In this document: piece after piece, positions 5,412-29,906 of the stretch
Layout: the number at the start of each line of letters is the position of its first letter
How positions within the stretch are numbered: the stretch's first letter is position 1
Source: Octopus sinensis
Lineage: Eukaryota
Length of the DNA: 64,000 bases
Direction: 5' to 3'
NCBI RefSeq assembly: GCF_006345805.1
Contig: NC_043019.1
Location: 30,627,360-30,691,359 of the forward strand
The notes under the pieces: model-generated
What the model was told of the DNA's origin: nothing
The model's database searches: none
The model's input: only the letters and a program-made list of their open reading frames with translations
Position numbers and translations under genes: made by a program

Positions 5412-5548
5412 TCACTGCCTGGAATCGAACTCGGGATCTTGGGGTTAATAGCCCGTGCTCTTAACCACTATCCCATATACCCGTGTGTGTTGTGGTTAAG
5501 AGCACGGGCTACTAACCCTAACATTTCAAGTTCAATTCCAGGCAGTGA

Positions 5549-5625
<77 letters not shown>

Positions 5626-7322: not shown

Positions 7323-8316
7323 AAGGATGAAAAGGAACACATGAGTTGATATATATGTAAAAAACAAGTCAGGATAGAAAATGCTAAAATAATTTTATAA
7401 AGAACATTTCAGTACCGGTTTCGGTCATTGAGACCTTTTCAACTGTAACAATTAAATAATTAAATTTAGAAAAATTAAAAGAAAAATTTTTTTAAAAGAA
7501 TATTTGTACAGTGTTCAAATATAAGTGGCATTCTCCTTGTTTCTGCCTTTCTCTGTCTCTCTTGTTTACTCTTGTGGGGTTCGAGGTCATATATTATATA
7601 TTCATATTGTTTTTGTGCATGCATGTATGTATGTATGAATGAATGAATAAGGAACTTACTCAGTACAGTACTTCCAGGATAGAGAGCTGCTGTTTTTATT
7701 CCATTGTCTGAAAATCGTTTCCAAATCTACAGAATAAACAGAGAAATTATTACTGAAGGATCCCTTCCCAAAGGAACAACAAAAACAACAGAACAGAATT
7801 AAACAAAACAACACAGTCTAAAATTCATCTTGATTTAGATTTAAAAAGTTTGATACTTATTCTATTGGCCATTTTTGCTGAGCTGCTTAGTTACAAGGAC
7901 GTGAACAAACCAGCACCAGTTGTCAAGTAATGTGTGTGTTTATGTTTGTGTACTAACACAGATTCAAAGACACACATGTATATGAATGTGCACATACATA
8001 CATATGTAATTACATATGTGTGTGTGTGTGTGGGAAACTAATTAGTAACTTGAATTTAAACGATGATGATGATGATGATGTATATGAAATGATATATATA
8101 TATATATATATATTCTGTGCCGGTGGCACATAAAAAGCTCCCACTACACTCTCGGAGTGGTTGGCATTAGGAAGGGCATCCAGCTGTAGAAACTCTGCCA
8201 GATCAAGATTGGAGCCTGGTGCAGCCATTTGGTTTGCCAGCCCTCAGTCAAAATCGTCCAACCCATGCTAGCATGGAAAGTGGACATTAAACGATGATGA
8301 TGATGATGATGATATA

Positions 8317-8786: not shown

Positions 8787-10400
8787 GTATACGTACACAC
8801 ATGCACACATGTATATGTTTTTATGTTCAGTTATAATACACACAATTTTACATTAATCTGATGGGTTACTCTATACTTTTGTAGAGTACAAATTTCTTCT
8901 TCTTAAACAAATATATTATGAAGAGTGACTGATGTCCAGTCGACCAGTTGAGCCATCATTGGACTGTAGTCTGATGGTATTTCAACTAACTAGAACTTCG
9001 AAGTCACTCTCAATAATATTCTTGTTTAAAAATAACACACACACACACACGCATGATAAGCTTCCACACAGTTTCTGTCTATCAAATCCATTCACAAGGC
9101 ATTGTTTGATCTAGGTTTATAGTAGAGGACACTTGTCTATAGTGACATGCAATGGGACTGAAACTGGAACCTCGTTGCTACAAGGCAAGCTTCGGAAAAC
9201 ATATAAGCAAAACATATTTTTTGAGTTGTGTCTGGGAAGAGTCATTTTCTTTTTGTGCCTTATAATGTAACACACTCACTGGTAATATCTGATATGGTCC
9301 CAAATAGGGACCATCGATATTAAACTGATTTTTAGAATGAGGCGAAGAGTTAGGGGCTTGCTCCGCCTTTGCCATGGGTTGGTCTGGTATAGCAATATTT
9401 CCAGGATTCAGCCCATTATTAGAGAGATGGTCAAGACTATTGAAAAGGTTGCAAGGCGCAACAAAAATTTTAGGAAAATATAAATAAGAAATAAGTGGAA
9501 ATTTTACCAGTGAGAGTGTGTTACATTATAAGGCACAAAAAGAAAATGACTCTCCCCAGACACAACAGAATATGCTTCAACACACAAACTCATATAAAGA
9601 ATCTTGCAAGCCAAATCCAAAAACGAAATTATTTTTTGAGGTTTAACCCTTTCGTTACTGTATTTATTTTGAGATGCTCTGTGTTCCTTTCAATTACTTT
9701 AAATATAACACAGAATTTAGTAAAATAACTTGGTTATCATTAAGCTAGTGTTAGGAACATAAATTGTGACTAAGGTTTGTTGGAAGATTTTAATTTAGAA
9801 CATATGAAAACAAGATATTTGTACTCAGAACCAGAGCTGGTTTCAGCCGGGTTGGTAACAAAAGGGTTAAAGTGAAAAAAAAATTTTTTAATAAATTTTC
9901 TATATTTAACCGAGTTATTTGCAGAATATTTAAATATCTAAGGAAGGTCAAACACCAATTGTTATAAGATATGGAATAAGAATTCTTCCTTACCGGTTCT
10001 GCATTCCACCACTTGCTATCAATATTACCTGTCTTGAAAGAGTCGTTATACTTGATATCAAACATGCGGTTGGCAATAATTCCATGAGTTTCTGGATAGA
10101 GTCCCTGTTAATTAACAAATGGCAATTAATAAGCTTCTAGAATTATTACGTCTTCTTTTGTTAATATTCTTTTATTCTTTTTATTGTTTTATTCATTTCA
10201 GCCATGCGGCTGCGGTCATGCTGGAGCACCATCTTCAAGAAATTTTAATCGAATGTATTGAGCCTAGTACTTATTCTATTGATCTCTTTTGCTGAGCTGC
10301 TAGTTGATGGGGATGTAAACATAACAACACCAATTGTCAAGTGGCAGCGTGGGGATGACAAGCACAGACACACACAGGTATGTATACACACACACACATA

Positions 10401-10448
<48 letters not shown>

Positions 10449-13400
10449 ATATATATATATATATATATACATATGTATATGTATGTATCTGTGTAGAGAT
10501 AGATATGTATGTATGGATGTATATATATATATGTTTATACACACACATACATACACACACACACACATATTTATTAACACATGCATACATATTTATATAA
10601 TGGGCTTCTTTCAGTTTCTGTCTACCAAATCCACTCACAAAGCTTTGTTTGGCCTGAGGCTATGGTAGAGTACACTTGTCCAAGGTGCCATACAGTGTGA
10701 CTGAACCCGGAACCATGTGGTTGGAAAGCAAGCTTCTTACCACACAGCCACATCTGCACTTTAAAAACAGATAATGGCTGTATTTGCATATTCCAAGAGT
10801 TCTCTCTCCTTCTTCAGTGCCTTGTACCTGGATGTGTCTTTGTTATCATTCCCAAGGTTCCTTTTATTTAAGGGTTTGCTTAACCTTTTAGCATTCAAAT
10901 TACTGTATTAAATGTAATGTTTATTTATTCATGTTGTTTGGAAGTAATCATATACAGGGTGTTCAAAAAGTCTCTCCACAGTGAATTTTATTTTCTCCAA
11001 GATGTATTTCAAAACAGGTGTAGAAGAGTCAACTTATGTATTGAAAATGAAGGACGACACTTTCAACACCTCTTATAAAGTTTTTAAAATCTTGTAAAGT
11101 CTAATATATTCTTTTGTAGTCTTATACCATCTTATAAATATTTATTTTGCAATAAAATACTTACTGTGGAGAGACTTTTTGAACACCCTTTTTTACCTTG
11201 TAGCCTTGAAATTTTAATGATGTGACTGTATATTCATTTGTCTAATATTGTAGGGTAGGTGTGAGAGGCTGGATCTGGCCAGTTTGTGCATAAAATCAGG
11301 AAGAATATCTTGCCTGGATAGGGCTGCTTTAAATGCTAAGAGGTTAATGTCTTCAGTCCTCACATTCTGGTTATCTCTATTTTCAGATCTTTATATTTAT
11401 ATGATTAATTACTCCATTGTCATGTCAAAACCTGAATCTTTGGACTCAGTTGTGTTCCAGTATTTTTAAAAAATTTATTTTTTGCCTCTGTGATCTTATG
11501 TATCATCATCACAATCATCATCACCTTTTTAATGTCCATTTTCCATGCTTGTATGGGACAGACAGAATTTATTGGGAGGTGTAGGAGTGGCTGTGTGGTA
11601 AGTAGCTTGCTTACCAGCCACATGGTTCTGGGTTCAGTCCCACTGCGTGGCACCTTGGGCAAGTGTCTTCTACTATAGCCTCAGGCAGACCAAAGCCTTG
11701 TGAGTTGATTTGGTGGATGGAAACTGAAAGAAGCCTGTCGTATATATGTATATATGTATCTCTCTCTCTCTCGCTTGACAACCGATGCTGGTGTGTTCAG
11801 CAAAAGAGACTGATACAATAAGTACTAGGCTTACAAAGAATAAGTCCTGGTGTCAATTTGCTCGACTAAAAGGTGGTGCTCCAGCATGGTCACAGTCAAA
11901 TGACTGAAGCAAGTAAAAGAATAAAAGAGTAGGTTTTCTACAGCTGGATGCTCTTCCTGTCACCAACCCTCACCTGTTTCCAAGTAAGGTGATATTCCCT
12001 ATGACCAGAAAATGCTTTTATGGAAGACTGGATATAAATGACACTGCTAACATAACAGTGGCACTTGTTTACAGCTATCACATTAAGTCAAGGCGAGGAG
12101 ACAGTAAAACACACACACATTTTTGGTACCTTACTGTACTGGTGCCTTGCTGTACTCAAGAAGACCTGTACTCTGCTGCAGAAGTGTTATGACTGGTCTC
12201 TCTGGTGGCGCAAAGTGCCCATGTGGTGTCATGTAAAAGTGCCTGTGTGATTTCACATAAACGTGCCAATGCAGCACCACATAAAAGTGCCTTGTGCAGT
12301 GCCACGAAAAAGTACCCTGCACGCTCTGCAAAGTGGTTGGCATCAGGAAGGGCATCCAGCCATAGAAACCAAGCCAAAACAGACCGGAGTTTGGTGCAGC
12401 TCCCTAGCTGGCCAGCTCTGGTCAAACCGTCCAACCCATGCCAGCATGGACAACAACCATTAAACGATGATGACGACGATGATGATGATACATATATGAT
12501 AGGCTTCTTTCAATTTCTATCTACCAAATCCACTCACAAGGCTTTGATAGGCCTGAAGCTGTGTGTAATAAAAGTCATTTGCCCAAGGTGCCACATGGTA
12601 GGACTGAACCCTGAACCATGTGGTTGGTAAGCAAATTTTCCATCACACAACCACACCTTTTCCTATAAGTAATTACATTAATACAAAAAATAGGTCTTGT
12701 TTTGTCTCATGAAAAATACTCACAGTGGCCATACTGAAATGATTTGGGAAAGTTTTTGATGGAAACGCTGGTTTCATGTAAGGGCTATGGACTCCACATT
12801 CTCTGAGACGACTGATTACAGGTGTAACATGTCTGTTGAGATAACTCACTCGGAATCCATCCAATGAGATGAATATTAAAGTTGGACCACTGTAATAAAG
12901 AAAATACATTTTAAATATTTTAAAAATCAACATTTATCTTTTATCTTTTACTTCTTCCAGTCATTGGATAACAGCCTTGCTGGATTACTAGCACTGAAGG
13001 GCTGAGTTGAACAAATTGACCCTGAAGGAGGCGAGCTGGCAGAATCATTAGCACACTGGGTGAAATGCTTAGCGGTATTTCATCTGCCGCTACGTTCTGA
13101 GTTCAGATTCTGCTGAAGTCCACTTTGCCTTTCATCCTTTCGGGGTCGATTAAATAAGTACCACTTATTCACTGGGGTTGATGTAATCGACTTAATTCCT
13201 TTGTGTGTCCTTGTTTGTCTCTTCTATGTTTAGCCCTTTGTGGGCAATAAAGAATTAAATTGACACTAGTATTATTTCAGCAGTCTCTTTTTTACCAAAC
13301 TTTTAAGTTACAGGGATGCAAACAAACCAAAACCAGCTGTAAAGTGGTGATGGAGTACAAACACACACACACACACAATGGGATTCTTTCAGTTTCTAAT

Positions 13401-13856
13401 TTCTTTATTGCCCACAAGGGGCTAAAGATAGAGGGGACAAACAAGGACAGACAAAGGGATTAAGTCGATTACATCGACCCCAGTGTGTAACTGGTATTTA
13501 ATTTATCGACCCCGAAAGGATGAAAGGCAAAGTCGACCTCGGTGGAATTTGAACTCAGAACATAATGGCAGATGAAATACCGCTAAGCATTTTACCTGGC
13601 ATGCTAACATTCCTGCCAGCTCGCCGCCTCTTCTTTCAGTTTCTGCCTATCAAATCCATTTACAAGTATTTGTTTGGCCAAGGAACCATGATAAAAGAAA
13701 CTTGCCCAAGATGCTATGCAATGGATCTGATGTAACAACTGGTGTGTTTACGTCCAAATAACTTAGTGGTTCGGCAAAAGAGACCGATAGAATAAGTACT
13801 AGGCTTACAAAAAATACAAATGACTGAAACAAGTAAAAGTGTAAAAAGTAAAAGTG

Positions 13857-13888
<32 letters not shown>

Positions 13889-14425
13889 GTGAATTGAAGA
13901 AATGGAGCTGAACGAAGATTGAACAGAAATCATTTTATTTCATTCTACACGTGTTTCGAAAGGCACAATTTACCAAAATCCGATTGAATAATGAGACCAT
14001 ATTGTGTCTTTCTCTTCAGGAAGAAATAGGAAATCCGTTGGAAAAAACAAAAACAGAACAGAGGCGGAGCAAAAACAGAACATTTTTTGTTTTTTGTTTT
14101 TGTTTTTGTTTTTTCCAACGGATTTCCTATTTCTTTCTGAAGAGAAAGACACAATATGGTCTCATTATTCAATCGGATTTTGGTAAATTGTGCCTTTCGA
14201 AACACGTGTAGAATGAAATAAAACGATTTCTGTTCAATCTTCATTCAGCTCCATTTCTTCAATTCACCAATAATATTAAAATTCAATTATCCGCACCAAC
14301 GCACGGTTGCAACACCATATGGTTGTACCTCCAACCGTGCTGTCTTCTGCTGTGATTTTTGCTACCAAGGTATCGGTTAAACTTTTGATTAATCTGCTAC
14401 AAGATTATTCATCTTTCTATTTCAC

Positions 14426-14463
<38 letters not shown>

Positions 14464-15382
14464 CACAACATGACAACAGATGTTGGTTTATGTCTCCACA
14501 ACTTCGTGGTTCAGCAGAAGAGACCAACAGAATAAAGTTACAAAAGCACCAAGCTTTTGAAAAATAAGTACTGGATTCAATTGGTTTGACTAACACCCTT
14601 CAAGAAGGTACCCCCAGCATGGTCGCAGCCCAGTGACTGAAACAAGTAAAAAGACAAAAGACCTGAATGTACCAGTAATTATTGGGTGTGACCTTCAATG
14701 CATTTCTAAATCCAGAATATTGAGAACCATTGGCCGATGCCAGCCACGCCTGGCACCAGTGCAGGTGGCACGTAAAAAGCACCCACTACACTCATGGAGT
14801 GGTTGGCGTTAGGAAGGGTATCCAGCTGTAGAAACATTGCCAGATAAGACCGGAGCCTGGTGCAGCCTTCTGGCTTCCCAGATCCCCGGTCGAACCGTCC
14901 AACCCATGCTAGCATGGAGAACGGACGTTAAACGATGATGATGATGATGATGATGATTGCTCTGGATATTTAGATTTTCTTGGGAAGTTAAGTAACGGTA
15001 GATAAAGCAGTAAGATAATCATAGAAGCAGAAGGGGGATGTTGCTAGGAACATCTGCTAAGTCTTTAGCAAATAACAGTAAACTATTTATCAAAATTGGA
15101 AAATACATTATATGATATATTCTTAGATGTACTATGTCTGAAAAAAAAAAAAAAAAAAGGTAAACGAAAGAGATGATCGTGACTGCAATGCTTTTGATCA
15201 TATATCTGCTTGACAACAGGAAGTTTTGGTTAAGGACAATACGAAGCTAAACAATATTGGCTAACAGCATGTTGTCATGATTACTATAACATTAAACAAA
15301 CTATGAATTACATTTCTTACAGCTGCTTATAGTCCAGGGTATTTAATAATAATGTGTATTTAATAAAAGTAGTAATAGTAGC

Positions 15383-15421
<39 letters not shown>

Positions 15422-16062
15422 CATCATCATCATCATCATCATTTAGCATCTGCTTTCCATGCTAGCATAGGTTGGACGGTTCAACTGGGGTCTGGGAAGC
15501 CAGAAGGCTGCACCAGGCCCAGTCTGATCTGGCAATGTTTCTACAGCTGGATGCCCTTCCTAACACCAAGATGTCCTTCCTAAATAATAATAATAATAAT
15601 CATCATCGTTTAATGTCCGCTTTCCATGCTAGCATGGGTTGGATGATTTGATTGAGGACTGGCGAACCAGATGGCTGCACCAGGCTCCAATCTGATCTGG
15701 CAGAGTTTCTACAGCTGGATGCCCTTCCTAACGCAAACCACTCCAAGAGTGTAGTGGGTGCTTTTATGTGCCACTGGCACGAGGGTCAGTCAGGTGGTAC
15801 TGGTAATGGCCACGCTCAAATGGTGCTTTTTACATGCCACCTGCACAGGAGCCAGTCCAACGGCACTGGCAACAACCTCGCTCGAATGTTTTTCACGTGC
15901 TACCAGTACAAGTGCTAGTAAGGTGACACTAGTAATGATCATGTTGAATGGTGCTTTCTATGTGCCACTGGTATGGAAGCCAGTCAGCTGTAGCAGCGAT
16001 CATGCTTGGATGGTGCTCTTAGTGCTCCACTGGCATGGGTGCCAGTCAATAATAATAATAAC

Positions 16063-16097
<35 letters not shown>

Positions 16098-16382
16098 TAA
16101 TAATAATAATAATAATAATAATGGTTACAAATTTTGCTACAAGGGCAGCAATTTTTGGGGAGAGTGATAGTCAATTACATCGACCTCAGTGTTCAACTGG
16201 TACTTATTTTATCAACCCCAATATGATGAAAGGCAAAGTCAACCCCAACGGAACTTGAAATCAGATCAGAATAACAGGCAAAATACTGCTAAGCATATTG
16301 TCCAGCATGCTAATAATTCTGCCAGCTCACCACCTCAATAATAATAATAATAACAATAATAATAATAATAATAATAATAATG

Positions 16383-16418
<36 letters not shown>

Positions 16419-16877
16419 GTTTCAAATATTGCTACGAGGGCAAAAATTTTGGGGGAGGGGGCTAGTCGATTACATCAACCCCAGTGTTCAATTGGTACAT
16501 ATTTTATTGACCCCGAAAGATGAAAGGCCAAGTCAACCATGGCAGAATTTGAACTCAGAACATAGTGATGGGTGAAATAGAGCTAAACTTTTTGTCCAGT
16601 ACACTAATGGTTCTGCCAGTTTGCTACCTTAATAATAATAATGTCATCGTGCTGGTGACATATAAAAAGCACCAACCAATCGTGGCCGTTTGCCAGCCTC
16701 CTCTGGCCCCTAGAGGAATAAATAAATGTAGTTAAATGCAGGTGCTATTCAAATCTTTATACTTCTTATACTTCTGGAATAATACCAATGTCTTCTTTGA
16801 AACATATGTTGGAAGTATAAAGATTTGAATAACACCTGCGTTTAACTCCATTTACATATATATAAATATATTAAACA

Positions 16878-16958
<81 letters not shown>

Positions 16959-19847
16959 TTAATTAATTAAAAAAAGCAGAGGAAAAGACAAGAAAAAACA
17001 AGAATGTCAGGATGTAGTATTAATAAGATGCTCGAAGAAGGAAAAGAGTAGTTGGTTTACTTTCGAGTATAGCTCTTCTTCAGAAACAGGAAAAATAGGA
17101 AAGTCCAAAGGAAAAGGAGGGAGAAAAAAATCGCCAGTAGTCAACATGTAGTTACATTTTGAAGTGACCAAAAGTAGGACAAAGAGAAAGTGCTTTCTGG
17201 GACAGGAGAGTGTGAAGATGCTGTGTATGTTTGTGTGTGTGTATGTGTGGTGGCATGTGTGTGTGTGTGTGATAATGTGTGTGTGTGTGTGTGTGATAAT
17301 GTGTGTATATATGGTAGTGTCTATGTGGAAGTAACTGTGTGTGCTTGGTAACATGTGTGTATGGTAGCGTGTGTGCATGGTAGTCTGTGTGCATGTGGTG
17401 GTAACTGTGTGTGTGTGTGGTATTAACTGCATGTCTGTGTGGTATTAGCTGTTTGTATGTGTTAGTATTTGTGTGAGTAGTCTGTGTGTGTTTTTGTGCT
17501 TGTGTGAGTAGGCTGTGTGCGTTAATGTCCCTCTGAGATGTCAGCAGCTATATTAACAAGTGTGTGTGGCAGTGTGCATCTGTGTATGTGTGTTTTTGCA
17601 TGTGTGTGTGCGTAGATAGAATGATCAATAGTGAGTCAGGGCAGTCTGAAGTTGTCTGAAGAGTGTGTGAATGGGTGGGTGTGGCTGTATGTATGTGTGT
17701 GTGTTGTTGGCATGTGTACGTAGATGGAGTGGGAATGTGTGTGTGTGTGAACATGTGTATGAGTGCATGTGTATGTCCTCTCTCTCTCTCTCTCTCTCTC
17801 TCTGTATATGTGTGTGTGTGTGTACGTGTATGGGGGGTTGTGTGTGTGTCTATGTGCATGTGAGTGAGTGTGGAAGTGTATGTATGTGTGTATATATGTG
17901 TACATGTGTGTGTGTTGTGTGTTTGTTGTGTGTGTGGAGGTATATGTGCTTTCATGTGTGTGCATGTGTGTGTGTGTGCGTGTGCATGGGCTTCTTTCAG
18001 TTACTGTCTACCGAATCCACTCACAAGGCTTTGGTCAACCCAGGGCTGTAGTAGATGACACCTGCCTAAGGAGCCGCGCAATAAGACTGAACCCAGAACC
18101 AAGTGTTTCGGAAGCAAGCTTCTTACCACACAGCCATGCCTACACCTATAAACATACATACAATAAAAGTTTCAACACAACATGGCTATGAATAAATGAT
18201 GTTCATTGTTAGTTATCAAAACAGCTATGGTTTATGCCTAGTTTATGTTTTCACAGCAAGACTAAAAAGTCATTGCTAATAAACTTCAGAAATAACACAA
18301 AAACATCACGTTCTCTTGAGAAAGACACATTTTAAAATTTGGCATAGAAACCTTTTTTTGTTTTTGTTTTTATGTTTAGCTTCTCTGTAATACAAAACTA
18401 TGCTAATTTATCTGTACGATGAGTGTCACATATAAAGCTTTCAAAGAAAGAAACTGGAGAACTTAGATATCAACTGTACATAACCAATAGACCTATGACT
18501 TTTTAAGGAAGTATGACTGTTCAATTTATTAACACAATAATGGAGATTCCAGTTCACTCAGCTGTAGAAATGAGTTGTGATGACACTGGTGCCAAGCTGT
18601 ATTGGCCTTTGCCTTTCTCTTGGATAACATCGGTGGCATAGAGATGGGAGGCTGGTATGCAGGGGCAACTGCTGGTCTTCCATAAACAAACTTACCTGGA
18701 CTTGTGCCTCAGAGTGTAACTCTCGAGGTGCAATCCTGTGACTGAAGGGGGTCTTTACCCATTTTTGAATATCTATATGCCATTTTGCAGAATACTGAAA
18801 GCACAAGCTCTACTGGGTTGGACATGTTACAAGGTTTACAGACACCAGATGGACCCATGCAGTTGCTGTGCGGTATCCAAGAGACTGAAAAAGGCCACTT
18901 GGAAGGTCAGCAATATGACGGAAGATGATTTGGTCAAGCAATTTGAGGAAAGATGGCAAAGAATGGTGCAGTCAAGACAGAACTGGAAGTGCATTGTAAC
19001 CAGGGGTGTATAACAGCATCTAGTCTGGTCGGTGCTGTGATACTGTGATATCCATATACCATATTTTCCAGCATACAAACTGAATTATTCAATAAAATTT
19101 ACAGCCCCAAAAAGGTAGGTTAGCTTATATGCCAAAACAACTTTTTGGAGGAACAAAAATTCCATCTGAAATGCAACAGGATTTGGGAAGATAGCAACAA
19201 TGTTTCAATATTTACCACTAAGAAAGGAATGTTCTCAAGAAAATTTAGCAAATGCCAGAACGTAAGTGAACAAGACAAATGGAAAGATACAAAATATAAA
19301 TTAATTTCATTTGTCTTGCTCGCTTACGTTCTGGCGTTTGCTAAATTTTCTTGAGAACATTCCTTTCTTAGTGGTAAGCCCATAGCGGATCTTCTAGCAT
19401 AATGGATGTCCACTTACAGGTTATCCCCCTTATATATATTGCATTAAGAGATGTATGTGTATGTCACAAAGGAGAGTAATCCACAATAAGTTGAGTAGTA
19501 GTAGTGATGCTGGTGGTGGTGATGGTGGCCGTCGTCACTGTCATCATTATTGTTGTAGTAGTAGTAGTGGTAGGCATGGCTTAGTGGTGAGGATATTGCA
19601 CTTATGATCGCGAGATCATGGTTTTAGTTCCTAGACTGGCTGGTGCATTGTGTTCTTGAGCAAAACACTTCATCTCACTTTGCTCTGCTATCACATTGAC
19701 CCCTGACATGGGACCCACTGTGCACCTCTGCAGGGCAATGTCAATTCGAATGTGGGAGGGAGCTAATATATGGCACATACATTTGATCACTCTAAACAAA
19801 TCATTTGTGCAGGTCGTTCAGCAAAAGCTGAACACTCACACATAAGT

Positions 19848-19915
<68 letters not shown>

Positions 19916-21210
19916 CAGCAGTAGTAGTAGTAACTGTGATAGTATACGACAAGCAAGGGATGCTAGCATGAGATAGAAATGAGTGTTAAAATAATAATGA
20001 TAAATATACTGTAATATTATAGGTGCAGGTGAGGCTGTGTGGTAAGAAGTTTGCTTCTCAATCACTTGGTTCCAAGTTCAGTCCCATTGCACAGCACCTT
20101 GGGCAAGTGTCTTCTACTATGGCCCTGGCGAACTAAAATCTTATGAGTGGACTTGGTAGTCAGAAAGTGAAAGAAGCCCATCGTACACTGTGTGTGTGTG
20201 TGTGTGTTTGTGTTTGTCTTGCCCCTTTCACAGTAGTAGTTTGCTTGTGTCACTACCACTTAGTGGTTCAGCAAAAGAGACTAATAGAACAAGCACCAGT
20301 GTCTAAGAAGACTAAGTACTGGAGTCAATTCATTCGATGAAAAATATTCGAGGACAGTGCCCCAGTATGGCCACAGTCCAATAACTAAAAGCAAGTAAAA
20401 GATGAAAGATAAAAGATAAATTTTATCGACTATAAAATCGTTAAGACTACATGCAAAATATTTTGATTAACAATGATTTATCAGGCATCTCTTTAAATCT
20501 TTTTGAAAGAAATTGGCAATGATAAAATATTGCACTAAACTCTATCTTGAAAGAAAATTAGTCAAAAACGGACATCAAAATTTTCTTTATGTCTTTCCAT
20601 TGTATTTACTTTATGTTCAATAAGGATTATAGACATTAAAAAAAAAAAATTCTTTTAAATTTCATTTCTAGTCCTTTTCGGTTTTTTTTTTTTTTTTTTT
20701 TTTTGCTAGAAAGAGATTTTAATATCTAAACTGCTGTTGATGATAATCGAGAACTGTTTCATTTATTTGTAGATTAAAACTATCATTCTCCCTCAACTCA
20801 CACCTTTTGCTTTACATTTTCAAGAATTATGCTTCATTAACTTCCATCAAGTTAGTTTTTCTTTTCAGATCCAAAACTGGCTGTCACTGACCCCACCCTA
20901 CAACCACCACTGTCACCACCATTATTATTTTTATTATCATCATTATTATTCCCAGTTAGGATATTCTATACTCCTCAATCATTTATAAATATTTTGCTAT
21001 TACTATGGCAGTCACATATAGTATTTTTATGTTGTTCTATTGTTGAGCCCATTTTATCATTATTATTATTATTATTCAGTAGTTTTATTTTTATAGCGTG
21101 CTTTCACTTCACTTCACACAGAGTGCAGCTCTGTGTGCCTTGGGTATGTGCTGTGATTTGTTGTGATGCTCTGATTGTTACTGTATTGAAAGTGTTTATT
21201 ATTATTATTA

Positions 21211-21268
<58 letters not shown>

Positions 21269-21448
21269 CATCATCAGGCATAGGAGTGGCTGTGTGGTAA
21301 GTAGCTTGCTTACGAATCACAATGGTTTTGGGTTCAGTCCCACTGTGTGGCACCTTGGGCAAGTGTTTTCTACTATAGCCTCGAGCCGACCAAAGCCTTG
21401 TGAGTGGATTTGGTAGACGGAAACTGAAAGAAGCCTGTCGTAAATATG

Positions 21449-21501
<53 letters not shown>

Positions 21502-24500
21502 GTGTGTGTATATGTTTGTATCTGTGTTTGTCCCCCCCAACATCGCTTGACAACTGATGCTGGTGTATTTACATCCCCATAACTTAGTGATTCAGCAAAA
21601 AAAGACCGATAGAATAAGAACTAGGCTTATAAAGAATAAGTACTCGAGTAAAGGCAGTGCTCCAGCATGGCCACAGTCAAATGACTGAAACAAGGAAAGA
21701 GTATTATCATCATCATCATCATTATTTTTTTGTTTTGTTTCAGGTAGTTATTTTAATCAGCTTGAGATCTTGTATTAGAATGATGATAAAAGATGTCCAT
21801 TTAGATATCTTCTATAAGGTGCTAAACTAAGAGAAAAGAAAAAGACGAACTTCATAATTCTTCTATAGCAAATGAAAGTTGCGATGTATCATTAAAACAT
21901 GATTGCAAAGCAGATAACTTATTTAGAAAGCAAACTGCTTTGGCGCTGCTCTACAAATCACCCATACCCAGATAAAACTGGTTATTTAAGTGATAGAGTG
22001 TTTTATTATTCAAGGAATGACACCACCTGAACAGCAACACCAGTGGAGGCACAATGGCCCAATGGTTAGGGCAGCGGACTCATGGTCGGAGGATCATGGT
22101 TTCGATTCCCAGACTGGGCATTGTGTGTGTTTATTGAGCAAAAACACCTAAAAGTCCATGAGGCTCCAGCAGGGGGTGGTGGCGACTCCTGTTGTACTCT
22201 TTCTTCCTGTTTCTCGTCCCCGACTTCCTACGCAACCGCTGAGCCTGGATGCGCATTCATCCATCTGTCGATGCTCTCGGTGTCGGGGGTTGACCTGCTT
22301 TCTCTTCTGCGAGTCTTATGAATAGCAAAAGACCACGTTTTGGACTTCTCCCATCTTGCGAGCTCTGGGATGAAGACCGTTCACTCAACAGCTACAGCAA
22401 CAGCAACACCATACAAGTGATGTAGTTTGTTTGCAATCTTCTGCGAAAATTGTGCCAGGCAATTGGGAAATATTACCCAACTTGGAAACAAGTGTGGGTT
22501 GGCAACAAGAAGGACATCTGACCATAAAGCAATCTGCCTCAAAAATATTCTCTCTGGCCCATGTAAGTATGAAAAAATGGGTGTTAACTGATGATAAACA
22601 TATGGTGTGAAACCTGGACACTTTTTGGAAATATATAAAATGGTTGCAATACTTCCATTAGACAAAGCTGAAAAGAAGAAGAAGGAGGAGGAGGTGGAGA
22701 AGAAGAAGAAGAAGAAGGAGAGGAGGAGGAGGGAGGAGGAGGGAGGAGGTAGAGAAGAAGGGGGAGGAGGAGGTGGTGGTGGAGGGGGAGGAGGTGGAGA
22801 AGAAGAAGAAGAAGAAGAAGAAGAAGAAGAAGAAGGAGAAGGAGGTGCAGAAGTAGAAGAAGAAGAAGAAGGAGAAGGAGGTGCAGAAGAAGAAGAAGAA
22901 GAAGAAGAAGGGGGATGTGGCAGCATAAGCAATGAGTACATTGGAGATAAAGTACTTACTTTGACATATTTTTGCATTGACTTGTATCAATTTTTTCACA
23001 GAATGGCCGATTCATCCAAGAGGATGCACGTTTTCCTTCCCAAAGTTTTGATGGCAAAAATGTTCTGAGCCTGACAGAATCAGATTTTGAGAGATTTGTC
23101 AAAAATTCAGTACCAGTCAAAATTTCGACATCTCTTATTCGAGAACGATATTCTTCAATATATTTCCTGGGCCTCTAAAACAGAAATATTTTGGGAGCAG
23201 AAAGAGAAATATTTAAAGGTTTTAATACATAATAAATGAATAAAGAATTTTTAAAATGCTGTATTAATGACCAAAAGAGTACAATTACAAATGTCACTGG
23301 CCAAAATGGGGTTTCTCCAAAGAGTCACTGGAGTAACGTTCCTCAACAGGGTATGAAGCTTGGAAATCAAGGAATCTCTCTATGCTGAGCCATCACTTCT
23401 TCGTATAAAGAGATCACAGCTCTTGTACATCCACATGTGATTAAAATGTTATAAGAAAGAATTACAGAATGGAATCTTGAAGCTGAGCCAGTTGGCAAGA
23501 GACCCAGGAGGCGAGCTGGCAGAAACATTAGCACGCCGGGCGAAATGCTTAGTGATGTTTTGTCTGTCTTTATGTTCTGAGTTCAAATTCTGTGAAGGTC
23601 GACTTTGCCTTTCATCCTTTTGGAGTTGATAAATTAAGTACCAGTCATGCTCTGGTGTCGATGTAATTGATTTAATCCCTTTGTTTGTCCCCTCTGTGTT
23701 TAGCCCTTTGTGGGCAATAAAGAAATAAGAGACCCAGGAGTAAACCAAAAATGAAACGGTTGGATAATATCCATAGCTTCAGTTGGTCACACTTAGAAGC
23801 AACTGTGTAGAAGCTTTTTCAATCATCATCATCATCCAGTGTTTTAAATCTGGGTTTTGTCCCCATCAACTGGGGTGGCTGGATCTACCTCAATGCCAAA
23901 GCAACTGAGGTAGGCAGGTGCAGCCCACCCCAACCATTCGGCTGGCTGGTGCCCATTCTCCTTTGCTATCATGAGGCTTTTTTGGAGCTGGATTTCCTAC
24001 AGAGAGCATGCCCTTGCCTACCCCAAACCTCAGTTTCTAGACATGAGTGGTTCCGAGACCAAAGCCTCTACCATGAGTTTTAAGAAATATGGTGGAAAAC
24101 TAGCTCAGGAAGGCAGGAACGCTATTCCCTAAGACCCCTTTCAGAACACCCTACCTAATAGTTAATACAATATTTAGTACAACACAGTACTATGAGTTGT
24201 TGATGGTGCCTGTATGTGGTTGCTCACACTTCAAGTAAAAGCAGTTAAATCTCTTTCATATTACATACCATATCTCCAAAAGGAAAATAAGGTTAGTTAA
24301 GTTAAGGTTGATTTGAGGATAAACAATAATAACTTTATGGTATCACAATGCAGAAATTGTTGTAAGCTGCTTTTGTTTCATCCATTGTTTGCCCTGTTTG
24401 AGCAAACCTAGAATCAAAGTTGTTCCATTCTTGACCATCTTGTCCTTTTTCAGGTATTGCTTTGTATGACTCCATAGTATAATGTGCCCAAATTTACTTT

Positions 24501-26751
24501 TTAAGACAGTTGGGTATAATATGAAGGACATTCAGTTGATATTTCTTGCAGATCAAGCAACTGCATAGAGGCATTCTTAGTGGTTGCTAGAATATAGAAA
24601 TTTTTTTATCTCTTAGTCAGGAGGGAAAGATATACCCATGACCCCTTTCAGTGCCTATGAAGGTAGTGAGCAGGAGAGAAGGAGGAAGTGATCCCCAAAC
24701 CAGAGAGGAAGCCTGAATGCTTGCTTATATCAGAGTGGACTCCACTAAAGGCACCCAAAGAGCCAGTTGGTGGTGTTAAACTGGGCAATGGATTAATTAT
24801 ATTATCCCCAAATCCAGTGATTATTGCAAATATTTCATAAATTAAATTCTCATGCAAATAACGAGGTGCAGGCATGGTTATGTGGTAAGAAGTTTGCTTC
24901 CCAACCACATGATTCCAGGTTCAGTCCCACTGTGTGACACCTTGGGCAAGTATTTTCTACTATAGGATTGGGTTGACCAGAGCCTTGTGAGTGGATTTGG
25001 TAGAAATGAGTGCATTGTATACATGTGTGTGTGTGTGTGTGTGCGCGTTCGTGTGTCTGTCATTGTTCCCCACCACTGCTTGACAACCGGTGTTGGTGTG
25101 TTTATGTCTCTGTAACTTAGCAGTTCAACCAATGAGTCTGATAGAATAAGTACCATGTTTTAAAAATAATAAAGTCTACTAGGGTTGACTCATCTAACTA
25201 AAGATTTTTCAAGGCAGTGCCCCAGCATGGCCACAGTCTAATGACTAAAATAAGAAAAAGAATAAAAGATAATTGCAGTGGTGGGATATGATAACAGTGA
25301 GAGATACATATTGTTTTTAACAATTCCAGAATCGAATAAATATGATAGCCTTCAGCACCTACCTTACAACTGGCAGTTTCTTGGGTGTGAGGAAGAATGA
25401 CTGACATTATTTCAGTATGGTTTCGGCAGTCTTGGAAGTCGCCATCTGATTGGCATTTGCCCAAAATAAGATAAAAATGGCTTGGAACAGAAAAAGTAGT
25501 TCTGTTTTCTTCCGATCTGAAATTAGAAAATACATATATATTTTTCTTGAGCCCTATTACTCAAAGCTGTTACCTGGTTTCCATGGCATGTATGCGACTG
25601 AGATAATATCATTCCCCTTGAACAGGATGCCATTCTGTTGTAGTGTTGAGGGGAGGGAACAAGTTAACCCTTTTGATATCAACCCGGCTGAAACCAGCTC
25701 TGGCTCTGAGTACAAATGTCTTGTTTTCATAAATTTTGAATTAGAATCTTCCACCAAACCTTAGTCACAATTTATGTTCCTAACACAAGCTTAATGATAA
25801 CTAAGTTATTTTACTAAATCCTTTTGTTATATTTAAAATTAATTGAAAGAAACACAGAGCATCTCAAAATAAATGCAGTAATGAAAGGGTTAATTACATC
25901 GACTGGTATTTTATTTTATCAACCCAGCCATAGAAACATTGCCAGATCAGACTGGGCCTGGTGAAGCCTTCTGGCTTCCCAGACCCCAGTTGCACAGTCC
26001 AACCCATGCCAGCATGGAAAGCGGACGCTAAACGATGATGATGATGATGATGATGAACCCTGAAGGGATGAAAGACAAAATTGATCTTGGTGGGATTTGA
26101 ACTAAGAACATAAAGACCCAGAAGAAATACTGCATAGCATTTTGTCTGAGGTGTTAATGATAGCCTCCAACCAGATCACTGCTTATATACATAAAAATAA
26201 CCAAGATTTCTTCCAGAAGAAGTTGACTGAGATAAAGTCTAGAAATTAACGACCTGTAGGGACATTGTATTTTGTTATGCAACCACAATATGCTACAAAG
26301 TATATTAAACGTTTTTATAAGTCAATACCATGTTCTACTGTGTTAGCAGTGCTATTAAATCATGTATTATGGTCATCTCTTCAGATTTTCTTCTATAATG
26401 ATAGCCAACACCTGATTTTATTAACTTTTGTTGCCAAGATCTCATTATTGTTTACATCAGGCATCGTGGATATGAAATATAATAAAATCAGTACTGGCTA
26501 TAATTTTTACAGAAAATCTGTAGAGATAATCTGAATAATAAAGTATAAAAACTGTCAATTTTCTACTCTCTTTAATCTCTTTTACTCTTTTACTTGTTTC
26601 AGTCATGTGATTGTGGCGATGCTGGAGCACTGCCTTTAGTCGAGCAAATTGACCCCAGGTCTTATTCGTTGTAATCTTAGTACTTATTCTATCGGTCACT
26701 TTTGCCGAACTGCTAGGTTACCGGGACGTAAACACACTAGCATATATATAT

Positions 26752-26861: not shown

Positions 26862-27849
26862 CAGTTAGTTATATACAAACACACTCACATATTTTATATA
26901 TAAGTATTAAAGGAAAGTATACTGCATATGGCTAATGAAATAATAACACACTGCAGAGAAAAGCTGACTCCTTACATTTGTCTCGTGGTTGCAACAGTAG
27001 CATCATCAACATCTTCACCAACTGTTATGTTCTCAAAAATCGGACCAGCTACAGCATTTATTAATGAATATTTTGTCCTATACTCATTAATTAAATTGTG
27101 AATTTCTTTCCAAATTCCTTCAATTGGAGGAAAAAAAAAACAGTGAAAGATTAAATAAAAAGCAACAAGATATTGAAAGCAGTCATTTCAATATCAAAAA
27201 TAATTAAATTATAAAAGTTTTTACATTGAATTAGTTATATGTAATAAGGGTGTGGGGGTATTAGGAAAACTTCTAATGGCCTGTGGCATTATTTAAGCTC
27301 CACATATATGACTGTACCACACTGAAGAGATCTAATGAGACTGAAACAAGCCTGGGGCTGTCACTGTACCTGCCAAATATCTGATTTACTTATTCAAAAG
27401 TTTAGCATTTAAACGTGGATGCGCATAGCTTAGTGGTTAGGGTGTCAGCATCATGATCATAAGATTGCGGTTTCGATTCCTGGATCGGGCGACGCATTGT
27501 GTTCTTGAGCAAAACACTTAATTTCATGTTGTTCCAGTCCACTCAGCTGGTAAAAGTGAGTAATGCTGTGATGGACTGGTGTTCAGCTGGGGAACACATA
27601 CGCCATTGAAACCAGGAAACTGGGCCCATGAGCCTGGCTAGGCTTTATAAAGGGCACAGTGGAGGCGCATGGCTTAGTGGTTAGGGCGTCAGCATCATGA
27701 TCATAAGATTGTGGTTTCGATTCCTGGATCGGGCGACGCGTTGTGCTCTTGAACTTGAATTTGGAATGTAAAACTGGAAGAAACAATTCTGAGCATTTTG
27801 TCCAGCAGAGTAACAATTCTGCCAGCTTGTTACAACAATAAAAACAGCG

Positions 27850-27880: not shown

Positions 27881-29906
27881 CAACAACAACAACAGCACCA
27901 GGAGCAACAACTTCAAATTTTGGCATAAGGCTAGCAATTTTTAGAGGAAGAAAGCATTAGTTGATTACAGTGACTGTAAAAGGATTGAAGATATTTCCTC
28001 ACCATTTTTGAATCCTTCAAACATAGGAACAGCAGTCTTCATATAATGTTCATCTACAAAATGGCCAAAGGGATATTTAAGTTAATTACAGCATGGAAAA
28101 CTCCTGATAATCATTTAAAGACATACACATACTATTACATTAATCTTTAATTCTTTGTTAGTATAACAATCAATTCAACCATTTCATTTTTATTACTATA
28201 ATCACACATCACTTGTCATGTGACACATGTACTTTAAAACATGCTTTCTTCACTCTAAATATACAGGGTGTCCCAGAAGTTGTGCACCACCCTGGATTTT
28301 TAAAAGAATACACCCTTATTGATTTCAGAAACACTTTAGTGAAATTAATCATAATAAATGCTCAAATTGAGAATCCTCTACAATAAAACATGCCGAGAAA
28401 ATATAATAAAATAAAATGCTTTAATTATTTTAAATGAAAACCAGAATGGTGCGGGACTTCTGGGATACCCTGTATATAATTTGTGGTGCAAGTGTAGCAC
28501 AGAAACCTTTACATATGTAATGTTATCTAGGAATGCTATCATGTGATAGGACCAAATTGTTGTTTCCACCAAAATGTAGACCAGCTTAGTAAAAACCAAG
28601 GAAGCTCAACTCGCCAATCACTAACTGTTTTCTTCTGGGCCTCTTCTGCAGTTAAAAAGCAGAGCAGACAAGAGCTGGCTTTGGCTTGTGGCCTGGTAAC
28701 ATTCTGAATGTACATTAGCATTCTCTCCCTTTGAAGCAACACACACAGACCCCCCCCCCACCAGATACATATACATGTTATCATATAAGTGCAGGTGTGG
28801 TTGAATGGTAGGTAAGTTGCTTGCTTTACAAAGCAGCGAACTGGCAGAATTGTTAGCATGCCAGGCGAAATGCTTAGTGGTATTTCGTCTACCGTTACGT
28901 TCTGAGTTCAAATTCCGCCAAGGTTGACTTTGCCTTTCATGCTTTCAGGGTCGATAAATTAAGTACCAGTTATGCACTGGGGTCGATGTAATCGAATTAA
29001 TCCCTTTGTCTGTTCTTGTTTATCCCCTCTATGTTTAGCCCCTTGTGGGCAATAAAGAAATAAGAAGTTTGCTTCCGAACCACATGGTTCTGGGTTCAGT
29101 CCCACTGCATTGCACACTGGGCAAGTATCTTCTATTGTAGCCCCATGCCCACCAAACCTTGTGAGTGGATTTGGTAGATGGAAATCGAAAGAAAGCCATT
29201 GCATATATCATCATCACCATTATCATTATCATCATAATTTAATGTCTGTTTTTCCATGCAGACATGGGTTGGACTACTGGCATTTGAATAGAATGTCTCA
29301 GGAAAGAATTGCAAACTGGCAGTTGATCATGCTTGGAAATCCAATTAGAATGTCTAATGACTGCTGCTTCAAATAGAACCCTATGGAGAAGGTGCCTGAG
29401 GACTTTATTCCCATAACCCTCCCAGAAATAATGGGCAAAGAAGACGAGTGATTTATGGATGGATTTTAGCAGGGTTTATTAATTCTCACTATATCCAGAA
29501 TCTGGCTGAGTGTCAAGTCTGAAATTTCCAGTAAAGTGAGAATATGATCTGAGCAAGTTAATGACTATATGTGAGATCAGAAGATGAATGAGTATTGATG
29601 ATGTTAGAAGTAGAACTGGGAGTATTACATGTAAGCACTAAGTGGAAGAATGTCCTGTATTCTTATTCTTATTGGAAAGTAGAGGAAGTGGTGAGATTTT
29701 AACTGAGGAAATAAGGTCTTACTGACAAGATGATGGAGAATGGCTGAGTGCATCCAACTTGCCACTCTCAGACACATCCAACAAGAAACAGATGTTATAA
29801 TTGATGGTAATGATGATAACTGCGGTTGCAGTGAAAATGGTGATGGTGGGGATAATGATGACGAAGACAACAGTGATGATGAAAATGACGGTGGTAGTAG
29901 TGATAG

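What the first reader, a model, noticed from the sequence alone, without database searches (positions are those of the whole stretch)
12724..25516. Tandem ENPP polyprotein: the nuclease-like domain reads straight into a second phosphodiesterase domain
Seen: exon 22960-23174 encodes the usual ENPP C-terminus ([10 protein letters not shown]...RLRTFLP), then continues without a stop into [15 protein letters not shown]. It splices (GTAAGT, phase 2) onto the exon beginning [13 protein letters not shown]. Known: ENPP1-3 are SMB-SMB-PDE-NUC and end just after the LKTxLP motif, and the WVEEPCESINEPQC linker normally follows SMB2. In human ENPP1, as I recall it, that linker's two Cys pair with Cys in the KKCG and HRCLN segments; both partners are present here (RECG, ENCID). 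Inference: one chain carries at least two PDE modules (PDE-NUC-PDE...) with no SMB between them. I cannot tell from here whether this architecture has been described or how many modules the full gene has.
Basis: partly seen in the sequence, partly recalled or inferred. Interest (0 to 1): 0.9.

Follow-up and report, generated by a model that had tools for sequence, protein, structure and literature searches.

The report
Three-unit octopus ENPP ectoenzyme gene
The window holds the middle of one octopus gene whose protein strings three complete ENPP-type phosphodiesterase units head to tail, of which only the last looks catalytically alive. The same build is widespread in molluscs and already sits unnamed in public protein databases.

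Summary
Minus-strand exon 23174-22960 encodes the normal ENPP C-terminus, runs on without a stop into a Cys-bearing linker, and splices (GTAAGT, phase 2) onto exon 12889-12724, which starts a new phosphodiesterase domain.

My 17-exon model for the window (696 aa, all AG/GT) is 696/696 identical to residues 1035-1730 of Octopus sinensis XP_029649912.1, an "uncharacterized protein" of 2163 aa. That protein has a type II membrane anchor, a Thr-rich stalk and three linker-PDE-lasso-NUC units, with no SMB domains. The window spans unit 2 into unit 3.

Chiton, abalone, oyster, mussel, clam and scallop proteins have three or four such units. Two annelids and a priapulid have at least two. Cuttlefish and oyster assemblies carry the whole protein as one uninterrupted 6.4-6.9 kb ORF.

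In octopus and cuttlefish, units 1 and 2 have lost the metal ligands and the Thr nucleophile, yet remain well conserved. Only unit 3 is intact.

There is no evidence for cleavage into separate enzymes. I found no paper describing the architecture. Verdict: a real feature, already annotated but uncharacterised, and a new variant of a known family.

The parts
63781..63937 (-). Exon a: C-terminal part of the PDE domain of unit 2 ([16 protein letters not shown]...DAGWIVA). The gene continues upstream beyond the window edge.
   Evidence: Acceptor ttccag, donor GTAAGT, phase 2. Matches O. sinensis XP_029649912.1 from residue 1035.
50207..50261 (-). Exon b: the degenerate counterpart of the GxHGxDN exon of unit 2 ([18 protein letters not shown]). 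The zinc-binding His is replaced by Tyr.
   Evidence: Not found by motif or HMM. Located with the O. bimaculoides protein. Acceptor cgacag, donor GTAAGT. The H3 column reads Y.
44672..44759 (-). Exon c: end of PDE unit 2 ([10 protein letters not shown]...ELYNMMA).
40478..40635 (-). Exon d: lasso loop of unit 2, with the conserved interface sequon PAPNNGT.
35660..35836 (-). Exon e: start of the nuclease-like domain of unit 2 (LPFGLPYL...[11 protein letters not shown]).
30029..30152 (-). Exon f: NUC unit 2.
28003..28053 (-). Exon g: NUC unit 2 ([17 protein letters not shown]).
26976..27117 (-). Exon h: NUC unit 2. The EF-hand-like Ca site (DxNxDGxxD in relatives) is disrupted here ([12 protein letters not shown]).
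   Evidence: The motif is defined in PMC6052110.
25363..25516 (-). Exon i: NUC unit 2 ([12 protein letters not shown]...HTQETASCK).
23040..23174 (-). Exon j, first part: last helix and C-terminal tail of NUC unit 2 ([21 protein letters not shown]...[11 protein letters not shown]). This is where single-unit ENPPs end.
   Evidence: (ENPP3 chain ends at the aligned LKTYLPT).
23019..23039 (-). Exon j, spacer EGKRASS between units 2 and 3.
   Evidence: In the AlphaFold2 model the residue blocks covering the spacer and linker have pLDDT 58-67, so they are not predicted as long disorder.
22960..23018 (-). Exon j, last part: linker of unit 3 ([19 protein letters not shown]) with the two linker Cys. 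Donor AA|GTAAGT, phase 2. The TAA inside the donor is in frame, so an unspliced RNA would stop at once.
   Evidence: (aligns to the ENPP3 86-106 linker).
12890..22959 (-). Intron j-k, 10,070 bases. It contains only repeats and low-complexity ORFs, with no ENPP-like or signal-peptide-like exon.
   Evidence: (ORFs of at least 70 aa on both strands).
12724..12889 (-). Exon k: start of PDE unit 3. Includes SLDGFR (zinc Asp, codon 12861-12859), RECG (Cys partner) and SKTFPNH (Thr nucleophile, codon 12753-12751).
9994..10104 (-). Exon l: PDE unit 3 ([10 protein letters not shown]...WWNAEP).
7660..7726 (-). Exon m: PDE unit 3 ([22 protein letters not shown]). This exon is skipped in the O. bimaculoides models.
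   Evidence: (Argonauta).
6076..6109 (-). Exon m2: 34-base mini-exon ([10 protein letters not shown]).
4968..5094 (-). Exon n: PDE unit 3, [10 protein letters not shown] (zinc Asp codon 5006-5004, His codon 4994-4992).
1298..1406 (-). Exon o: PDE unit 3, [14 protein letters not shown] (second Cys partner; zinc Asp codon 1304-1302, His codon 1301-1299).
425..580 (-). Exon p: PDE unit 3 ([10 protein letters not shown]...FTNET). The gene continues downstream beyond the window edge.

Best explanation
The window is the middle third of one gene, the Octopus sinensis locus LOC115223464 or a near-identical genome. The gene encodes a single-pass type II membrane protein of about 2160 residues.

Architecture: the extracellular part is a Thr-rich stalk followed by three complete ENPP1/3-type units in one chain. 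Each unit is a Cys linker, a phosphodiesterase domain, a lasso loop and a nuclease-like domain. There are no somatomedin-B domains.

The junction: exon 23174-22960 is a hybrid exon. It encodes the end of the nuclease-like domain of unit 2, a 7-residue spacer, and the linker whose two Cys are stapled to the phosphodiesterase domain of unit 3.

Catalysis (inferred): each intact unit should work like ENPP1/3, with two zinc ions held by Asp/His ligands and a Thr nucleophile that cleaves phosphodiester or pyrophosphate bonds of extracellular nucleotides. In octopus and cuttlefish, units 1 and 2 have lost these residues but are kept under constraint. I therefore read the protein as one membrane-distal active site carried on two glycosylated pseudo-enzyme units. 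In most other molluscs all three or four units look active, giving a multivalent ecto-phosphodiesterase.

What is shown and what is inferred: the architecture, the conservation and the residue states are shown. Enzyme activity, substrate, topology and the role of the dead units are inferred.
For: Gene model: 17 exons, all AG/GT, 696 aa, 696/696 identical to XP_029649912.1 residues 1035-1730.

Units:
- My own unit HMM (734 positions) gives 90-755, 772-1447 and 1460-2154.
- Pfam gives three Phosphodiest stretches, two Endonuclease_NS stretches and no Somatomedin_B at E<=0.01.
- The only strongly hydrophobic 19-residue stretch is at 34-52.

Same build elsewhere:
- Three units: O. bimaculoides, cuttlefish, chiton, Mytilus, Mercenaria, Potamilus, Mizuhopecten, Dreissena, Crassostrea.
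- Four units: Haliotis, Mya.
- At least two units: Owenia, Helobdella, Priapulus, Patella.

Single mRNA:
- Logan contigs L001 (6719 nt, ORF 129-6536) and L002 (8202 nt, ORF 62-6937) encode the whole 2135-aa and 2291-aa proteins without interruption.
- Eleven further members of the cuttlefish cluster encode a protein of 2129 or 2135 aa on contigs of 6.7-7.1 kb.

Junction: the key residues are invariant, and the junction is 98% identical between the two Octopus species against 89-94% for the units.

Catalytic residues: with the motifs.

Constraint on the dead units: unit 1 is 92.6% and unit 2 is 93.9% identical between the Octopus species. The interface sequon NNGT is kept in all units.

Unit tree: the units of Octopus and cuttlefish pair one to one (SH-aLRT 99-100). 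The terminal units of gastropods and bivalves form a clade (98).
Against: - No reads, cDNA or peptides from this octopus were examined. The junction in this species rests on a RefSeq model and on my splice-site model.
- The newer O. bimaculoides annotation splits the gene in two inside PDE unit 2. Both pieces still contain a NUC-to-PDE junction.
- A short-query search for transcript fragments across the junction found none.
- The AlphaFold2 model is only moderate (mean pLDDT 67, pTM 0.60, 13 sequences). It gives no disulfide geometry.
- Activity and substrate are inferred from residue conservation only.
Confidence: 0.88

Rival explanations
1. Precursor that is cut. The chain is made as one piece, but proteases cleave it in the spacers so that the units act as separate enzymes. 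In octopus, cutting at the KR of EGKRASS would release the only active unit from the membrane.
For: A dibasic KR lies in the octopus 2-to-3 spacer. Some other spacers contain RR, RK or KRK (Nucella, Patella). From general knowledge, vertebrate ENPP2 is processed by a furin-type protease and ENPP1/3 can be shed.
Against: - The KR is absent at the same junction in cuttlefish (ESLRPSS) and in most other junctions.
- There is no R-x-[KR]-R motif.
- The spacers are only 5-16 residues at 10 of the 12 junctions (about 33-35 in Helobdella and Priapulus).
- The octopus spacer is not predicted as disordered.
- No protein data were available.
Confidence: 0.08
2. Two or three neighbouring ENPP genes wrongly merged, either by gene prediction or by mis-assembly. 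Unit 3 would be made from its own promoter and first exon hidden in the 10-kb intron.
For: Merged neighbours do occur. The Anisakis model P0060 has a Met and a hydrophobic signal-like stretch between its units. The O. bimaculoides annotations disagree with each other.
Against: - The linker of unit 3 is in the same exon and frame as the end of NUC unit 2.
- There is no Met plus hydrophobic segment at any of the 12 junctions examined.
- There is no candidate exon in the intron.
- The same arrangement occurs in two Octopus assemblies and many other molluscs.
- Full-length uninterrupted ORFs exist on RNA-like contigs.
- A unit 3 starting at exon k would lack the two linker Cys whose partners it retains.
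Confidence: 0.03
3. Decaying duplicate. Units 1-2 are dead relics of a tandem duplication on their way to loss, and the read-through is incidental.
For: Units 1 and 2 have lost most catalytic residues. Unit 2 has also lost the Ca-site motif of its NUC domain.
Against: - All exons of unit 2 in the window are open with canonical splice sites.
- Units 1 and 2 are at least as conserved between O. sinensis and O. bimaculoides as unit 3.
- The same dead state is shared unit by unit with cuttlefish, so it has been kept since before octopods and decapodiforms split.
- Structural Cys and the interface sequon are retained.
Confidence: 0.01

Closest known systems
Vertebrate ENPP1 / ENPP3 (type II membrane nucleotide pyrophosphatase/phosphodiesterases; solved structures 6C01, 6WET, 4GTW)
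   Same: Each unit has the same order of parts: Cys linker, PDE domain with a two-zinc site and Thr nucleophile, lasso loop with the NNGT sequon, and a nuclease-like domain ending at (L/R)(K/R)T.LP. The best solved-structure matches are ENPP3, then ENPP1 and ENPP2. The protein has an N-terminal membrane anchor. The loop between WPGS and the EEPD motif is present, as in ENPP1/3. From my own knowledge it is shortened in ENPP2, so a nucleotide-type pocket is expected.
   Different: - There are no SMB domains; a Thr-rich stalk takes their place.
- Three units sit in one chain instead of one.
- Two of the three PDE domains are catalytically dead in cephalopods.
Single-unit lophotrochozoan ENPPs without SMB domains (for example Ridgeia piscesae P0121)
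   Same: Type II anchor, then the W..C...C linker, then PDE directly. This is the likely ancestral unit.
   Different: One unit only.
Other ectoenzymes built by internal tandem duplication of a catalytic domain: carboxypeptidase D (three domains, the third inactive), somatic ACE (two), lactase-phlorizin hydrolase (four homologous regions), receptor tyrosine phosphatases (active D1 plus inactive D2). These are cited from general knowledge, not tested here.
   Same: Head-to-tail repeats of a whole enzyme fold in one membrane-anchored chain, with some repeats converted to conserved pseudo-enzymes.
   Different: Unrelated folds and chemistry. This is an analogy of architecture only.

Membership tests
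ENPP1-3 subfamily (NPP with nuclease-like domain) | Type I phosphodiesterase / nucleotide pyrophosphatase domain (Pfam PF01663) | tested here: met
   The spliced window model scores 118.9 bits at 374-462. The whole O. sinensis protein has three stretches and scores 690 bits.
ENPP1-3 subfamily (NPP with nuclease-like domain) | Complete catalytic set: Asp, Thr nucleophile, Asp, His, Asp, His, His | tested here: met
   Met for unit 3. D, T, D, H, D, H are visible in window exons k, n and o, and the last His lies outside the window but is present in XP_029649912.1. Not met for units 1 and 2: G,S,V,E,D,H,S and H,S,N,H,D,H,Y.
ENPP1-3 subfamily (NPP with nuclease-like domain) | C-terminal nuclease-like domain after a lasso loop | tested here: met
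   Endonuclease_NS scores 24.9 bits against a cutoff of 23 at 175-328. Residues 1-340 align to ENPP3 443-819.
ENPP1-3 subfamily (NPP with nuclease-like domain) | Two N-terminal somatomedin-B domains | tested here: not met
   There is no PF01033 hit at E<=0.01 in XP_029649912.1 or in the cuttlefish, chiton or abalone proteins. A Thr-rich stalk precedes unit 1. The protein is therefore not an orthologue-type member of vertebrate ENPP1/2/3, although each unit is ENPP1/3-like.
ENPP1-3 subfamily (NPP with nuclease-like domain) | Linker Cys disulfide-bonded to the PDE domain | tested here: inconclusive
   All four Cys are present in units 2 and 3, and the co-loss pattern across units fits the pairings. 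No coordinates were available to measure S-S distances.
ENPP1-3 subfamily (NPP with nuclease-like domain) | Secretory or type II membrane topology | tested here: inconclusive
   The single hydrophobic stretch is at residues 34-52 (KD19 2.33), outside the window. The window model has 16 N-x-S/T sequons. No dedicated topology predictor was run.
ENPP1-3 subfamily (NPP with nuclease-like domain) | Phosphodiesterase / pyrophosphatase activity | not testable with these tools
   This needs a recombinant protein assay.
Multi-unit (concatenated) ENPP of molluscs, annelids and a priapulid (a grouping defined here) | Two or more full linker-PDE-lasso-NUC units in one ORF, joined by short spacers with no signal or TM segment between them | tested here: met
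Multi-unit (concatenated) ENPP of molluscs, annelids and a priapulid (a grouping defined here) | Junction signature RT.LP..LW - spacer - W...C...C - DGF | tested here: met

The most novel reading that the evidence does not exclude
An old family of membrane-anchored ENPP concatemers with 2-4 complete units has gone undescribed in the literature. At least two units already existed before gastropods and bivalves split. Similar two-unit proteins are predicted in annelids and a priapulid, though the unit tree does not show that they share that origin. In cephalopods the two membrane-proximal units were converted into conserved pseudo-enzymes. These may act as a rigid glycosylated spacer or as non-hydrolysing nucleotide-binding modules that present or regulate the single distal active site.
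Probability: 0.5. Interest if true: 0.6.

Novelty: new variant of a known kind. Interest (0 to 1): 0.45.

Why it matters
ENPP1-3 are treated as single-unit enzymes in reviews of the family (PMC8808174). They regulate extracellular ATP and pyrophosphate, lysophospholipid signalling and cyclic-dinucleotide signalling.

A chain with three or four complete units, all apparently active in chitons, abalone and most bivalves, would be a multivalent ecto-nucleotidase. In cephalopods only one unit is active, which gives a natural series for asking two questions. [quoted passage not shown] And why are whole units concatenated?

There is also a practical lesson for annotation. These long models are real, not merged neighbours. 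The split or intron-retaining O. bimaculoides models should be corrected.

It is not a new kind of system. It is a known enzyme fold in an unreported arrangement that is already present, unnamed, in databases.

Tried and rejected
- An all-against-all BLAST of window ORFs, meant to find paralogous exons, was swamped by interspersed repeats.
- Regex and HMM searches for the GxHGxDN exon of unit 2 found nothing. The exon has lost the motif. It was found only with the O. bimaculoides protein.
- A 263-aa junction query, meant to catch short transcript-derived fragments, returned only bacterial NPPs and PDE N-terminal matches.
- The long Anisakis model (P0060) was rejected as an example because a Met plus a signal-like segment sits between its units. 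The C. auriculariae, Armadillidium and other long hits have large gaps between units and were not counted.
- Retroelement-like ORFs at 37.6-38.4 kb gave no Pfam hit.
- Literature searches on tandem or multi-domain ENPP, octopus and mollusc ENPP, pseudo-enzyme ENPP, and the locus and accession names found no description.
- The NPP3 structure paper did not list the linker disulfides.
- The AlphaFold2 model of unit 2 plus PDE unit 3 was only moderate.


Full report
**1. The observation**

On the minus strand, frame 3 of 23198-22938 reads [72 protein letters not shown] followed by a stop. The DNA shows acceptor ttttag|AGG at 23174 and donor AA|GTAAGT after 22960, phase 2. The TAA of that donor is the stop seen in the unspliced reading.

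At 12889 there is an acceptor ttacag|T. AA+T makes Asn, and the exon continues [32 protein letters not shown]...[12 protein letters not shown] to a GTGAGT donor after 12724.

**2. Gene model in the window**

I built the model from stop-to-stop ORFs and splice sites. Two pieces were added later:
- A 34-base mini-exon at 6109-6076.
- A 55-base exon at 50261-50207, which could not be found by motif because it has lost the motif.

The result is 17 exons, all AG/GT, giving 696 residues with no stop.

In the spliced ORF, Pfam places Endonuclease_NS at 175-328 and the start of Phosphodiest at 374-462. Against solved structures, residues 1-340 align to human ENPP3 443-819, where the chain ends at 820. 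Residues 349-462 align to ENPP3 86-203, which is the linker after SMB2 plus the start of the PDE domain. So a complete ENPP C-terminus is followed, after about eight residues, by the N-terminal linker of another ENPP catalytic domain.

**3. What the gene is**

The first protein search returned two overlapping Owenia fusiformis (annelid) proteins that cover 91-98% of the query colinearly. It also returned a partial Argonauta protein that starts at ASSW...; ordinary ENPPs covered only about 35% of the query.

A full scan with the Owenia protein found proteins of 1400-2240 residues with several matched stretches. Their names came from the cluster look-up:
- Mizuhopecten XP_021341604.1
- Dreissena XP_052277761.1
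- Nucella KAL8580376.1
- Patella KAK6178834.1
- Helobdella XP_009015219.1
- Priapulus XP_014666537.1
- Octopus bimaculoides XP_014771948.1 (2111 aa, 'uncharacterized protein LOC106870407')

The third search, with XP_014771948.1 as query, returned Octopus sinensis XP_029649912.1 (2163 aa, 'uncharacterized protein LOC115223464'). My 696-residue model is 696/696 identical and ungapped to its residues 1035-1730. The window is therefore this locus, or a near-identical genome of the O. vulgaris complex, and the junction is already part of a RefSeq model.

**4. Architecture**

I built an HMM of one linker-to-C-terminus ENPP unit (734 positions) from 60 single-unit proteins.
- O. sinensis has three full units at 90-755, 772-1447 and 1460-2154.
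- O. bimaculoides, the cuttlefish, the chiton, the scallop and the other bivalves examined apart from Mya also have three.
- Nucella has two complete units plus an N-terminally truncated first one.
- Mya arenaria (2960 aa) and Haliotis cracherodii (2947 aa) have four.

Pfam agrees: three Phosphodiest stretches in octopus, cuttlefish and chiton, four in abalone, and no Somatomedin_B anywhere.

The N-terminus has a short tail, one hydrophobic stretch (residues 34-52 in O. sinensis) and a Thr-rich segment. This is the layout of a type II membrane protein with a mucin-like stalk. The window runs from the last third of PDE unit 2, through NUC unit 2 and the junction, into the first two thirds of PDE unit 3.

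**5. One chain or several genes**

Twelve junctions in eight species have the same form. The NUC domain ends ...RT.LP..LW, then comes a spacer, then W...C...C and the DGF(R) strand. The spacer is 5-16 residues at ten junctions and about 33-35 in Helobdella and Priapulus. No junction has a Met plus hydrophobic segment.

In an alignment of 13 multi-unit proteins, T, L, P, W, W, C, C, D, G and F of the window's junction are invariant. Between the two Octopus species the junction is 98% identical, against 89-94% for the units.

Transcript-level support comes from two Logan contigs that carry the entire protein as one uninterrupted ORF:
- SRR29271465_61852: 6719 nt, ORF 129-6536, 2135 aa.
- SRR18452399_21473: 8202 nt, ORF 62-6937, 2291 aa.

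In animals whose orthologous gene spreads 700 codons over more than 63 kb, such contigs are most simply assembled transcripts. They carry no poly(A) tail. The first clusters at 90% or more with a Sepia (Acanthosepion) pharaonis protein and has eleven sibling proteins of 2129 or 2135 aa on contigs of 6.7-7.1 kb. The second clusters with Crassostrea (Magallana) gigas and C. angulata LOC105325428, including UniProt K1P2W3.

The 10-kb intron between the junction exon and the next exon contains only repeats and low-complexity ORFs. I did not examine reads from this octopus.

**6. State of the units**

I aligned all units to the HMM and read the seven catalytic positions and four Cys.
- Fully intact in every unit: the chiton, abalone, Mya, Mercenaria, Mytilus, Potamilus, Mizuhopecten and Owenia. 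In the oyster-like Logan protein all catalytic positions are intact, but one linker Cys of unit 1 reads Asn.
- Partly changed: Dreissena unit 2 has D to E and H to L.
- Dead: Patella unit 1.
- In both Octopus species, unit 1 reads G,S,V,E,D,H,S and unit 2 reads H,S,N,H,D,H,Y/K. Unit 3 has the full D,T,D,H,D,H,H.
- The cuttlefish protein shows the same pattern.

In the window this is visible as exon b (LNYDLDN where relatives have GSHGYDN). It is also visible in the intact [21 protein letters not shown] and ADHG of exons k, n and o. Unit 2 of octopus and cuttlefish has also lost the EF-hand-like DxNxDGxxD motif of the NUC domain (the motif is defined in PMC6052110).

The dead units are not decaying:
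- Units 1 and 2 are 92.6% and 93.9% identical between the two Octopus species. Unit 3 is 88.6%, lowered partly by a faulty stretch in the O. bimaculoides model.
- All units keep the interface sequon NNGT.
- Unit 2 keeps all four linker and partner Cys.

**7. The disulfide claim**

Unit 3 has all four (FCEK, SQCK, RECG, ENCID). Across units the losses are coupled:
- Octopus unit 1 and Patella unit 1 lack all four.
- Cuttlefish unit 1 and two single-unit references lack the first linker Cys together with the KxCG Cys, but keep the second pair.

This supports the pairing. There are two apparent exceptions, Haliotis unit 2 and oyster unit 1. I had no coordinates to measure. The AlphaFold2 model of unit 2 plus PDE unit 3 was moderate (mean pLDDT 67, pTM 0.60). 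It shows only that the spacer and linker are not predicted as long disorder (residue blocks 681-710, pLDDT 58-67).

**8. History**

In a quick maximum-likelihood tree of 50 units, the mollusc units form a clade that also includes Helobdella unit 2 (SH-aLRT 94). The terminal units of gastropods and bivalves form a clade (98). Bivalve units 1 and 2 each form clades (80 and 98). Octopus and cuttlefish units pair one to one (99-100).

Mya units 1 and 2, and chiton units 1 and 2, are recent duplicates or have been homogenised. So at least a two-unit protein predates the gastropod-bivalve split, with later gains. The deeper branches are unresolved and the search was short.

The hybrid exon fits an origin by unequal recombination between the last coding exon and the linker exon of a single-unit ancestor. 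Terminal units of several species end a few residues after the same LW. This last point is inference.

**9. Mechanism**

Shown:
- One ORF with three ENPP units.
- A conserved junction.
- Only unit 3 with a complete active site in cephalopods.

Inferred:
- Unit 3 hydrolyses extracellular nucleotide phosphodiester or pyrophosphate bonds by the two-zinc, Thr-nucleophile mechanism of ENPP1/3.
- Units 1-2 serve as a conserved, glycosylated, non-catalytic support or binding module.
- In other molluscs the protein is multivalent.

'Polyprotein' in the sense of a cleaved precursor is not supported, because the KR of the octopus spacer is not conserved in cuttlefish or elsewhere. It is not excluded either.

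**10. Novelty**

The family and fold are known. The concatenated architecture is present in RefSeq and UniProt as 'uncharacterized protein' or under automatic ENPP3 or venom-phosphodiesterase-like names. These names are homology labels, not evidence of a venom role.

I found no paper describing the architecture in the open-access library. The ENPP review describes only single-unit proteins. The subscription literature was not searchable. I rate it a new variant of a known kind, of moderate interest.

Noticed in passing
window 9991-9940 and 7726-7660, compared with O. bimaculoides XP_014771948.1 / XP_052831915.1: Both O. bimaculoides models read through the donor of exon l into the intron (…[24 protein letters not shown]…) and skip exon m ([22 protein letters not shown]). 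That exon is present in the O. sinensis and Argonauta proteins. The newer O. bimaculoides annotation also splits the gene into two proteins (1005 and 1172 aa) inside PDE unit 2.
   Followed up: partly
window 22954-22962 (minus strand): The GTAAGT donor of the junction exon contains an in-frame TAA. An RNA that keeps the 10-kb intron would therefore end at …SQCKNMSK, giving a protein with only the two dead units plus the orphan linker. I do not know whether such an isoform exists.
   Followed up: no
many sites, e.g. 85-243, 1493-1900, 4294-4770, 10303-10842, 11436-11904, 20023-20156, 21305-21827, 24821-25117, 29038-29373, 32198-32646, 33921-34446, 41523-42147, 43853-44087, 45269-45580, 48314-48969: One family of short interspersed repeats occurs about twenty times in both orientations, all inside introns of this gene. 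Translated matches are 60-100% identical over 20-60 codons. It made self-comparison of the window useless for finding paralogous exons.
   Followed up: no
window 13912-14244 and 5083-5874: Near-palindromic stretches. ORFs on opposite strands at 13912-14208 (+) and 13948-14244 (-) are 87% identical over 98 codons. A similar pair occurs at 5203-5310 (+) and 5641-5748 (-). They look like inverted-repeat elements inside introns.
   Followed up: no
window 36943-37455, 47365-47733, 55670-56025, 3333-3813, 53956-54302, 54618-54921: Tandem arrays inside introns:
- 188-base unit x2.7
- 184-base unit x2
- 166-base unit x2.1
- 25/100-base unit x19/4.8
- (AAT) x116
- an (AC)-rich tract of about 300 bases
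The G-rich skew peaks at 16-18 kb and 34-36 kb coincide with TG/CA-rich microsatellite DNA.
   Followed up: no
window 37616-38378 (minus strand): A G+C-richer stretch (0.45) has several open frames of 40-70 codons that read like fragments of a mobile-element protein. Pfam gave no hit.
   Followed up: partly
related proteins P0400 (Mya arenaria) and P0401 (Haliotis cracherodii): These two species have four units rather than three. In Mya the extra unit is a recent copy of unit 1 (units 1 and 2 are sisters in the unit tree). The chiton's units 1 and 2 are also near-identical to each other, which suggests recent duplication or gene conversion.
   Followed up: partly
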